Shown here piece after piece: positions 40,725 through 41,577 of a stretch of 48,847 nucleotides of DNA. A model generated the notes under the pieces. It was not told the origin of the DNA, did no database searches, and saw only the letters and a list, made by a program, of their open reading frames with translations. Both the position numbers and the translations under genes were made by a program. The stretch is from Cyanophora paradoxa CCMP329. Its lineage: Eukaryota > Plantae > Glaucophyta. The stretch lies in contig QPMI01000705.1 in the NCBI GenBank assembly GCA_004431415.1, positions 1 to 48,847 on the forward strand. The letters are read 5' to 3'. Position 1 is the first letter of the stretch. Each line of letters opens with the position of its first letter.

Positions 40725-41577
40725 TTATTCATCTTTTAATTGTGATGGCCAACGATAATTATCATCCTTTATTCGGAAAGAACTAACATCATCTAACATT
40801 GAAAGTATAGGAGTTTTATTTTCAGTTAGATCAATATAACAATGCGCACTCTTAGTTAAATTAACGTGTACTTCACTAAATAAATTACCTTCTCTCCATA
40901 AATTATGTAAATGATCCATATAAAAAAACGTTTTCGTAATTGATCCATGTTAATATATTCACCAAAAAAAACATAACCAGCTTCGGTTCCGAATGTGATA
41001 TCATGCCCTTTTTCCCAAATAACTTCATAAATTTTTGTTTGACTATCGCAAATTAATAAATATAATGCAGCCCATCGAATAATGATATTCTTAAATCCTC
41101 TGACTTTAAGTAATTTTTTATTTAAAAGAAATTCTATGGTTGTAATTTGTTGGGGGGTAACATTTTTAAAAACATAACCATTCCGGTCAACTACACCTTG
41201 AATTTTTTCAAAGTTATCATCAAATAAAACTGCCACTGGTTGATGATCTCGCAAATATAACATAAAACGTGGGGGAAAATTTCACGAACACTTGTAAAAC
41301 TAAATGCGTATTCTCGTATTTTATGAGTTTTTTCTAATTTATGAATAATTTGAGTTGGTGAATAATTCCAAATATATTTATGTTTAGCTTTTTCATAGAC
41401 TTGGTTCAAAAATTCTTGATTAAAGGGGATTGTCTTAGGTTCTACTTCAAATTCTAATAATTCAGTAGTATTCTTTAGTGGACTTCGAATAAACCAAAGT
41501 AAACTAACAAGAAAAGAAAAAGAAATTATTTCTGGTTTAATGTTTTTAAAAAATTTATACCAATTAGAATTTTGCAT
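40725..41577 (-). CDS. ftsQ: Cell-division protein FtsQ/DivIB homolog (two apparent -1 frameshifts, near 41275 and 40925)
   Basis: Joined ORFs give about 284 aa: N-terminal TM, then R.IFPP.F.L.L....PVA, GVVDRNG, LKVRG, W..LY, TEAGYVFFGEY, YIDL...P as in cyanobacterial FtsQ. Confidence 0.72.

What the first reader, a model, noticed from the sequence alone, without database searches (positions are those of the whole stretch)
40725..41577. Hidden FtsQ/DivIB homolog split over three hypothetical ORFs: a plastid-encoded peptidoglycan divisome remnant with ftsW
Seen: ORFs 41191-41577, 40856-41263 and 40725-40919 join into one ~284-aa frame by adding one base in each of two homopolymers (about 41271-41279 and 40922-40928). 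The product has a short N-tail, one TM segment, then VREIFPPRFMLYLRDHQPVA, GVVDRNG, LKVRG, WAALY...KIYEVIW, TEAGYVFFGEY and YIDLTENKTP. Established: FtsQ is bitopic with POTRA and beta domains and, with FtsLB, activates FtsW-FtsI septal peptidoglycan synthesis; glaucophyte plastids keep a peptidoglycan wall. Inference: the motif order matches cyanobacterial FtsQ as I recall it, so the plastid encodes at least two divisome components. No ftsI, ftsL or ftsB is seen in this window. It may already be annotated in some glaucophyte plastomes.
Basis: partly seen in the sequence, partly recalled or inferred. Interest (0 to 1): 0.8.

Follow-up and report, generated by a model that had tools for sequence, protein, structure and literature searches.

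The report
Plastid ftsQ split by assembly errors
The three small "hypothetical" ORFs are one ordinary 284-residue plastid ftsQ cell-division gene of Cyanophora, already annotated in sister plastomes, and it looks broken here only because this assembly dropped one base in each of two homopolymer runs.

Summary

- **The breaks.** Three minus-strand ORFs (41577-41191, 41263-40856, 40919-40725) are real. Contigs from four public runs of the same organism match 40500-41800 with no substitutions. With those bases the frame is one 284-aa ORF.
- **Orthologs.** The three pieces align colinearly, at 64-67% identity, to intact 284-aa plastid proteins that UniProt already names "Cell division protein FtsQ" (A0A097PB30, A0A2Z4HG57). 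A 2018 paper lists ftsQ as a glaucophyte-specific plastid gene (PMC6330054).
- **Homology.** Pfam, NCBIfam and PDB sequence searches find nothing. Profile-profile comparison does:
  - against a cyanobacterial FtsQ, probability 98.8%, E 6.6e-17;
  - against 82 bacterial FtsQ/DivIB sequences, P 9.7e-8, with shuffled controls far lower.
- **Structure.** An AlphaFold model hits only FtsQ structures at the top.
- **Context.** ftsW lies 4 kb away. The gene evolves fast (dN/dS 0.28) but is conserved.

Two other first-reader notes on this genome also report homopolymer single-base losses.

The parts
40725..41577 (-). ftsQ gene. It reads as three ORFs in this window and as one 284-aa ORF once the two bases seen in the reads are present.
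41271..41275 (.). First break: G5 on the plus strand (C5 in the gene). Public-run contigs have G6.
   Evidence: G put in behind 41270 in all 4 runs
40922..40928 (.). Second break: A7 on the plus strand (T7 in the gene). Public-run contigs have A8, and the old reference ORF179 also reads through this point.
   Evidence: A put in behind 40921 in all 4 runs; P0001 runs across the junction
41479..41529 (-). Single transmembrane helix (about residues 17-33), after a 16-residue Lys-rich N-terminal tail.
   Evidence: hydropathy maximum at residues 13-34; model helix 15-31
41222..41460 (-). POTRA-type domain (about residues 40-119; beta-alpha-alpha-beta-beta).
   Evidence: hhalign to FtsQ family and to cyanobacterial FtsQ; BLASTP of pieces 1 and 2 to Hydrococcus FtsQ residues 43-114 and 114-216; model
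40794..41221 (-). FtsQ C-terminal beta domain (about residues 120-262), followed by a low-confidence 22-residue tail.
35977..36954 (-). ftsW (SEDS family), the second plastid-encoded divisome gene in the window.
   Evidence: Pfam FTSW_RODA_SPOVE E 2.8e-88
39926..40660 (-). mntA (ABC ATPase), the downstream neighbour. The order apcF-ftsQ-mntA-mntB is conserved in three Cyanophora-type lineages.
41675..42184 (-). Allophycocyanin-family gene (apcF by the reference record's name), the upstream neighbour.

Best explanation
This is the plastid ftsQ gene of Cyanophora paradoxa. It encodes a 284-residue bitopic inner-envelope protein: a short stromal tail, one transmembrane helix, then a POTRA domain and an FtsQ beta domain facing the peptidoglycan space.

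By inference from bacterial FtsQ, it acts as a scaffold of the septal peptidoglycan synthase. It would bridge the stromal FtsZ ring machinery to the plastid-encoded FtsW and to nucleus-encoded penicillin-binding proteins during cyanelle division.

Its appearance as three ORFs is an artefact. This assembly under-called two homopolymers by one base each (C6 read as C5, T8 read as T7).

Shown here: the two missing bases, the single ORF, orthology to annotated Cyanophora FtsQ, and homology to cyanobacterial and bacterial FtsQ over almost the full length. Inferred: membrane topology, location and partners.
For: - **Reads.** Four runs each give one contig across 40500-41800 with 0 substitutions and exactly two insertions, at the two frame breaks. 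All 20 holder runs share the same 0.97 word fraction.
- **Corrected ORF.** It is 284 aa.
- **Orthologs.**
  - 284-aa proteins named FtsQ from Cyanophora (A0A097PB30) and C. sudae (A0A2Z4HG57), at 64-65% identity.
  - Unnamed orthologs of 282 and 280 aa in the same apcF-X-mntA-mntB context.
  - All pieces are colinear with these.
- **Homology to FtsQ.**
  - hhalign of the Cyanophora profile against Hydrococcus FtsQ (the ORF just upstream of ftsZ, Pfam POTRA_1 E 6e-14): probability 98.8, E 6.6e-17, 214 columns.
  - Against an 82-sequence FtsQ/DivIB alignment: probability 94.3, P 9.7e-8, 229 columns, score 56.7. Controls scored 14.8 (reversed) and at most 22.2 (24 shuffles).
  - BLASTP of the window's own pieces against Hydrococcus FtsQ: 2e-10 and 4e-4, in order.
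  - ESM feature search: the top clusters carry POTRA_1 / FtsQ_DivIB_C, score 0.95.
- **Structure.** The AF2 model has pLDDT 78. Its top 10 Foldseek hits are all FtsQ structures, E down to 7.7e-9.
- **Selection.** dN/dS is 0.28 against the P0008 lineage.
- **Literature.** PMC6330054 lists ftsQ as a glaucophyte plastid gene.
Against: - Pfam and NCBIfam give no POTRA_1 or FtsQ hit for the pieces or for any intact ortholog.
- A profile search of PDB sequences finds no FtsQ.
- Database-wide HMMER finds only Cyanophora-type relatives.
- The confident AF2 model used an alignment that already contained bacterial FtsQ, so its fold match is not independent. With Cyanophora sequences alone the model was useless (pLDDT 37.7).
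- The runs are stored as contigs with guessed library type and may include the window's own sample.
- The old reference annotates only ORF179 from Met106. It may therefore carry the same C-run call, which could mean a true strain difference at that run.
- No functional data exist for any plastid FtsQ.
Confidence: 0.9

Rival explanations
1. The breaks are real. The gene is a decaying pseudogene in this strain, or the window is a nuclear copy of plastid DNA (NUPT) that has begun to degrade.
For: The window does carry the two breaks. crtE and rbcR in the same window are also frame-broken. The old reference annotates only the last 179 aa, so a break upstream of Met106 may exist there too.
Against: There are no substitutions in 1301 bases, and both differences are single-base losses in homopolymers, which is the signature of consensus error. 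Essential-looking plastid genes such as crtE would be multiply broken as well. The whole window is 30% GC plastid sequence. Two other first-reader notes on this genome report the same homopolymer losses elsewhere. Orthologs are intact and under purifying selection.
Confidence: 0.06
2. The DNA truly lacks the bases, and the full protein is made by programmed frameshifting or transcriptional slippage at the homopolymers.
For: Both breaks lie in slippery homopolymers. Some of the runs that show the extra bases are guessed to be RNA.
Against: Runs guessed to be DNA, with contigs up to 188 kb, show the same extra bases. The reference DNA-derived ORF179 reads through the T run. Orthologs in other species have plain intact ORFs.
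Confidence: 0.01
3. The protein is a single ORF but not FtsQ. It would be another POTRA-bearing or unrelated membrane protein whose FtsQ name in databases is an over-annotation.
For: No curated HMM recognises it. It does not lie next to ftsZ or ftsA.
Against: Full-length profile-profile match to genuine FtsQ with clean shuffle controls. The same length and TM-POTRA-beta order as FtsQ. BamA and TamA POTRA structures score about 10^6-fold worse than FtsQ. Cyanobacterial FtsQ itself lacks a Pfam FtsQ_DivIB_C hit, so Pfam's silence is expected.
Confidence: 0.03

Closest known systems
Plastid FtsQ of other Cyanophora species (UniProt A0A097PB30, labelled C. paradoxa, probably the NIES-763 record KM198929; A0A2Z4HG57, C. 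sudae)
   Same: Same length (284 aa), colinear, 64-67% identical, and the same gene. In the unnamed orthologs the neighbourhood is also apcF-ftsQ-mntA-mntB.
   Different: Here the reading frame is interrupted twice by missing homopolymer bases. The protein diverges quickly between species (dN/dS 0.28, against 0.03 for mntA).
C. paradoxa cyanelle ORF179 (P48335 / NP_043274, 'uncharacterized 21.2 kDa protein in ycf23-apcF intergenic region')
   Same: 99% identical to residues 106-284 of the corrected product and at the same locus.
   Different: The reference entry lacks the N-terminal 105 residues (tail, TM, most of POTRA) and has no functional name. It has Leu where the window and all orthologs have the invariant Trp188.
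Cyanobacterial FtsQ (e.g. Hydrococcus sp., ORF upstream of ftsZ, L026:530-1354)
   Same: TM + POTRA + beta domain and a similar length (275 aa). 26% identity over 214 columns, hhalign E 6.6e-17. Shared motifs around the POTRA beta2-beta3 strands and the beta domain.
   Different: It is encoded next to ftsZ and recognised by Pfam POTRA_1. The plastid protein is AT-biased, Pfam-blind, and detached from ftsZ, which is nuclear in Cyanophora (from general knowledge).
E. coli FtsQ (PDB 2VH1, 6H9O, 8HHF; FtsQLB complex)
   Same: Overall fold by model comparison (Foldseek E 8e-9 to 3e-8). The best local sequence match falls at the equivalent POTRA/beta junction.
   Different: Only about 13-17% identity. 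Whether the C-terminal strand that binds FtsB is functionally kept is unknown. No ftsL or ftsB is seen in this window.

Membership tests
FtsQ/DivIB | Bitopic architecture: short cytoplasmic N-tail and a single N-terminal transmembrane helix, total length about 230-300 aa | tested here: met
   Corrected ORF is 284 aa. The hydropathy peak is at residues 13-34 after a Lys-rich tail. Model helix 15-31.
FtsQ/DivIB | Sequence homology to the FtsQ-type POTRA domain followed by the FtsQ/DivIB C-terminal beta domain | tested here: met
   hhalign against cyanobacterial FtsQ: E 6.6e-17, 214 columns. Against 82 FtsQ/DivIB: P 9.7e-8, 229 columns, with controls at most 22 versus 57. The collected family was checked by Pfam. 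Caveat: Pfam PF08478/PF03799 and NCBIfam HMMs themselves give no hit on the pieces or orthologs.
FtsQ/DivIB | Three-dimensional fold like solved FtsQ | tested here: inconclusive
   The model of ortholog P0006 (pLDDT 78, pTM 0.67) has FtsQ structures as its top 10 Foldseek hits. However, its alignment contained bacterial FtsQ, and a model from Cyanophora sequences alone failed (pLDDT 37.7).
FtsQ/DivIB | Gene in a division/cell-wall cluster next to ftsA/ftsZ (typical but not obligatory) | tested here: not met
   It lies between apcF and mntA, with ftsW 4 kb away. This order is conserved in Cyanophora lineages. The feature is a usual context, not a requirement of the family.
FtsQ/DivIB | Localises to the division site and binds FtsL/FtsB (DivIC) and the FtsW-FtsI synthase | not testable with these tools
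No ftsL, ftsB or ftsI was recognised in the window, and no complex prediction was run.
Assembly artefact (homopolymer under-call) | Independent sequence data of the same organism restore the frame with one-base length changes confined to homopolymers | tested here: met
   two insertions and no substitutions in four runs. Other genes in the window are broken in the same way.

The most novel reading that the evidence does not exclude
The plastid FtsQ of Cyanophora has diverged so far that it is invisible to curated HMMs, with protein divergence about tenfold faster than its neighbour mntA. One reading is that it works in a reduced, host-controlled divisome without classical FtsL/FtsB partners, having gained new nucleus-encoded partners instead. 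That would make it a handle on how an organelle's peptidoglycan septation came under host control. A smaller point: the C. paradoxa reference record (ORF179) needs re-annotation as a full-length ftsQ.
Probability: 0.15. Interest if true: 0.4.

Novelty: already known. Interest (0 to 1): 0.12.

Why it matters
The practical value is in annotation and quality control.

- **Assembly quality.** The plastid contig of this assembly carries systematic one-base homopolymer deletions. They fragment real genes (ftsQ, crtE, rbcR), so 'hypothetical ORF' calls in it should not be trusted before polishing.
- **Biology.** The result confirms what is already published: Cyanophora plastids keep ftsQ alongside ftsW for their peptidoglycan septum. 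The check also shows that the FtsQ name, which no curated HMM supports, holds up under profile-profile testing.
- **Reference record.** The 1995 reference entry ORF179 is the C-terminal two thirds of this gene.

Tried and rejected
- **Pfam and NCBIfam.** No relevant hit on the three pieces or on the intact orthologs.
- **PDB sequences.** phmmer and profile searches gave only chance hits.
- **Database-wide searches.**
  - HMMER with piece 2 found only Cyanophora-type relatives plus three spurious long proteins.
  - Word-index searches with P0002, P0001 and the alignment found no bacterial FtsQ at E <= 10.
- **Bacterial genomes.** The search for related loci with the ortholog alignment gave 550 pattern matches, none confirmed. 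An earlier try failed for lack of conserved columns.
- **AF2 on Cyanophora sequences alone.** pLDDT 37.7, so it was not used for fold search.
- **The look-up of encoding contigs.** No record for mntA, apcF or P0001. The three window ORFs are not in the protein collection, so the reference DNA at the C run could not be read.
- **hhalign against E. coli FtsQ alone.** Only a weak local match at the correct place (P 0.008).
- **BLASTP of piece 3.** No similarity to cyanobacterial FtsQ by itself.
- **Not run.** No complex prediction was run, because no binding claim rests on this work.
- **Operator rules.**
  - Read laying was given 1301 letters.
  - The read-corrected full-length protein was built only inside scripts for local hmmsearch/hhalign. 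The capped tools received the pieces separately or intact orthologs.

Full report
**What is in the window.**
- The window is 30.3% GC and carries typical glaucophyte plastid genes:
  - ftsW (35977-36954, minus strand; Pfam FTSW_RODA_SPOVE E 2.8e-88);
  - ccsA, hisH, mntB and mntA;
  - two phycobilisome genes;
  - pieces of crtE and a LysR regulator.
- The pair mntA/mntB is reported only from Cyanophora plastomes (PMC6330054).
- The frame changes fall at a C5 run (plus-strand G5, 41271-41275) and a T7 run (plus-strand A7, 40922-40928).

**Are the breaks real?**
- Twenty public runs of one organism hold the 1.3-kb stretch, all with the same 0.97 share of sampled words.
- I laid four of them on 40500-41800. 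Each gave one contig across the whole stretch, with no substitutions and exactly two differences: an A put in behind 40921 and a G put in behind 41270.
- Caveats apply. The runs are stored as contigs, their DNA/RNA type is guessed, and one may be the window's own source.
- The pattern (only homopolymer length changes, no substitutions) is that of consensus error.
- The same window has crtE broken into at least five frame segments, and the rbcR/ycf30-type regulator broken once.
- Two other first-reader notes on this genome report single-base homopolymer losses elsewhere.
- The old reference protein ORF179 reads straight through the T-run junction.
- I conclude that the split is an assembly artefact.

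**What the gene is.**
- Curated HMM libraries do not recognise the pieces.
- A full HMMER scan of 1.84 billion representatives with the middle piece returned two relevant proteins:
  - P0001, 179 aa and 99% identical. This is the C. paradoxa cyanelle 'uncharacterized 21.2 kDa protein in ycf23-apcF intergenic region' (P48335, NP_043274).
  - P0002, an intact 280-aa relative.
- A word search with P0001 then found two 284-aa proteins that their sources name 'Cell division protein FtsQ': A0A097PB30 (Cyanophora paradoxa label) and A0A2Z4HG57 (C. sudae). A profile search added a 282-aa ortholog.
- The window's three in-frame pieces align end to end with these at 64-67% identity and without internal gaps.
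- P0002 and P0008 sit in the same apcF-X-mntA-mntB order.
- PMC6330054 lists ftsQ among plastid genes exclusive to glaucophytes, and gives the Cyanophora plastome accessions U30821, KM198929, MG601102 and MG601103.
- The gene and its name are therefore already in the public record.

**Is the FtsQ name justified?**
- No ortholog hits Pfam, and a profile of them finds no FtsQ among PDB sequences. I therefore tested the name independently.
- I scanned bacterial genomes for a conserved FtsZ N-terminal motif, which gave 120 loci.
- I collected same-strand ORFs upstream of ftsZ and grew an FtsQ/DivIB family from the annotated E. coli FtsQ by iterated HMM search. This gave 81 members plus the seed.
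- A sample of nine sequences was checked with Pfam:
  - seven pass POTRA_1;
  - five of those also hit FtsQ_DivIB_C;
  - the two cyanobacterial members hit POTRA_1 only;
  - one member is just under the POTRA_1 cut-off;
  - one has no hit.
- Profile-profile comparison of the five Cyanophora-type proteins (window protein as corrected by the reads) with this family gave probability 94.3%, P 9.7e-8 and score 56.7. It covered 229 columns, residues 4-256. The reversed alignment scored 14.8, and 24 column or block shuffles scored at most 22.2.
- Against the single cyanobacterial FtsQ of Hydrococcus sp., the ortholog profile gave probability 98.8%, E 6.6e-17, 214 columns and 26% identity.
- The window's own pieces match that protein by plain BLASTP in the right order. 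Piece 1 matches residues 43-114 (E 4e-4) and piece 2 matches residues 114-216 (E 2e-10). Piece 3 has no match by itself.
- A protein-language-model search with P0002 put POTRA_1 / FtsQ_DivIB_C clusters on top, at 0.95.
- An AlphaFold model from Cyanophora sequences alone failed (pLDDT 37.7).
- With the validated homologs added, the model reached pLDDT 78 and pTM 0.67. It shows a TM helix, a beta-alpha-alpha-beta-beta unit and a mixed beta domain.
- Its ten best Foldseek matches in the PDB are all FtsQ, with E from 7.7e-9 to 8e-3. BamA and TamA POTRA proteins come far behind. This fold result is consistent with the homology but not independent of it.

**How it most likely works.**
- Shown: a 16-residue Lys-rich tail, one hydrophobic helix at about residues 17-33, then about 230 residues homologous to the FtsQ POTRA and beta domains, and a short low-confidence tail.
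- Inferred from bacterial FtsQ (established knowledge; structures 2VH1, 6H9O, 8HHF, 8BH1):
  - the N-terminus faces the stroma;
  - the body lies in the peptidoglycan-containing space between the envelope membranes;
  - the protein scaffolds and regulates the septal synthase, made of plastid-encoded FtsW and nucleus-encoded class B PBP, downstream of the FtsZ ring.
- The gene is under purifying selection but evolves fast. dN/dS is 0.28 against the P0008 lineage, with dN about ten times that of mntA at equal dS. This explains why curated HMMs miss it.

**Verdict.**
- The finding is not new, and the three-ORF appearance is a sequencing and assembly error.
- The residual points of interest are the mis-annotated reference ORF179 and the unusually fast divergence of this divisome protein.

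**Method note.** The capped tools were given only the separate in-frame pieces or intact database orthologs. The read-corrected full-length protein was used only inside local scripts.

Noticed in passing
window 44750-45583 (-): crtE (polyprenyl synthetase) is spread over at least five frame segments, so this gene also carries several single-base indels in this assembly.
   Followed up: partly
window 45751-46650 (-): The LysR-type regulator (rbcR/ycf30-like) has its N-terminal helix-turn-helix part in one frame (ending near 46512) and its substrate domain in another (46470-45751). This is one more frame break.
   Followed up: partly
window about 41013-41015 (Trp188 of the corrected FtsQ): The reference ORF179 (P48335) has Leu where the window, the four laid runs and all orthologs have an invariant Trp. 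This is a probable error or polymorphism in the 1995 record.
   Followed up: partly
L001 (ERR10034878), L125 (ERR10034893, SRR27758069): Public runs hold two further Cyanophora-type plastome lineages with intact ftsQ (280 and 282 aa; 42% and 63% identical to the window's protein) in the same apcF-ftsQ-mntA-mntB order.
   Followed up: partly
window 33781-34245 (-): A 154-aa very hydrophobic ORF with a Pro/Lys-rich tail between hisH and ccsA. It has no Pfam family.
   Followed up: no
window 35977-36954 (-): The listed ftsW ORF starts at TTG and is only 325 aa. It matches Pfam profile positions 13-334 of 356, so the true start may lie upstream or be cut by another indel.
   Followed up: no
L026:530-1354, L100:150-998: The two cyanobacterial FtsQ proteins hit Pfam POTRA_1 but not FtsQ_DivIB_C, so the Pfam C-terminal model under-detects the cyanobacterial and plastid branch in general.
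   Followed up: partly
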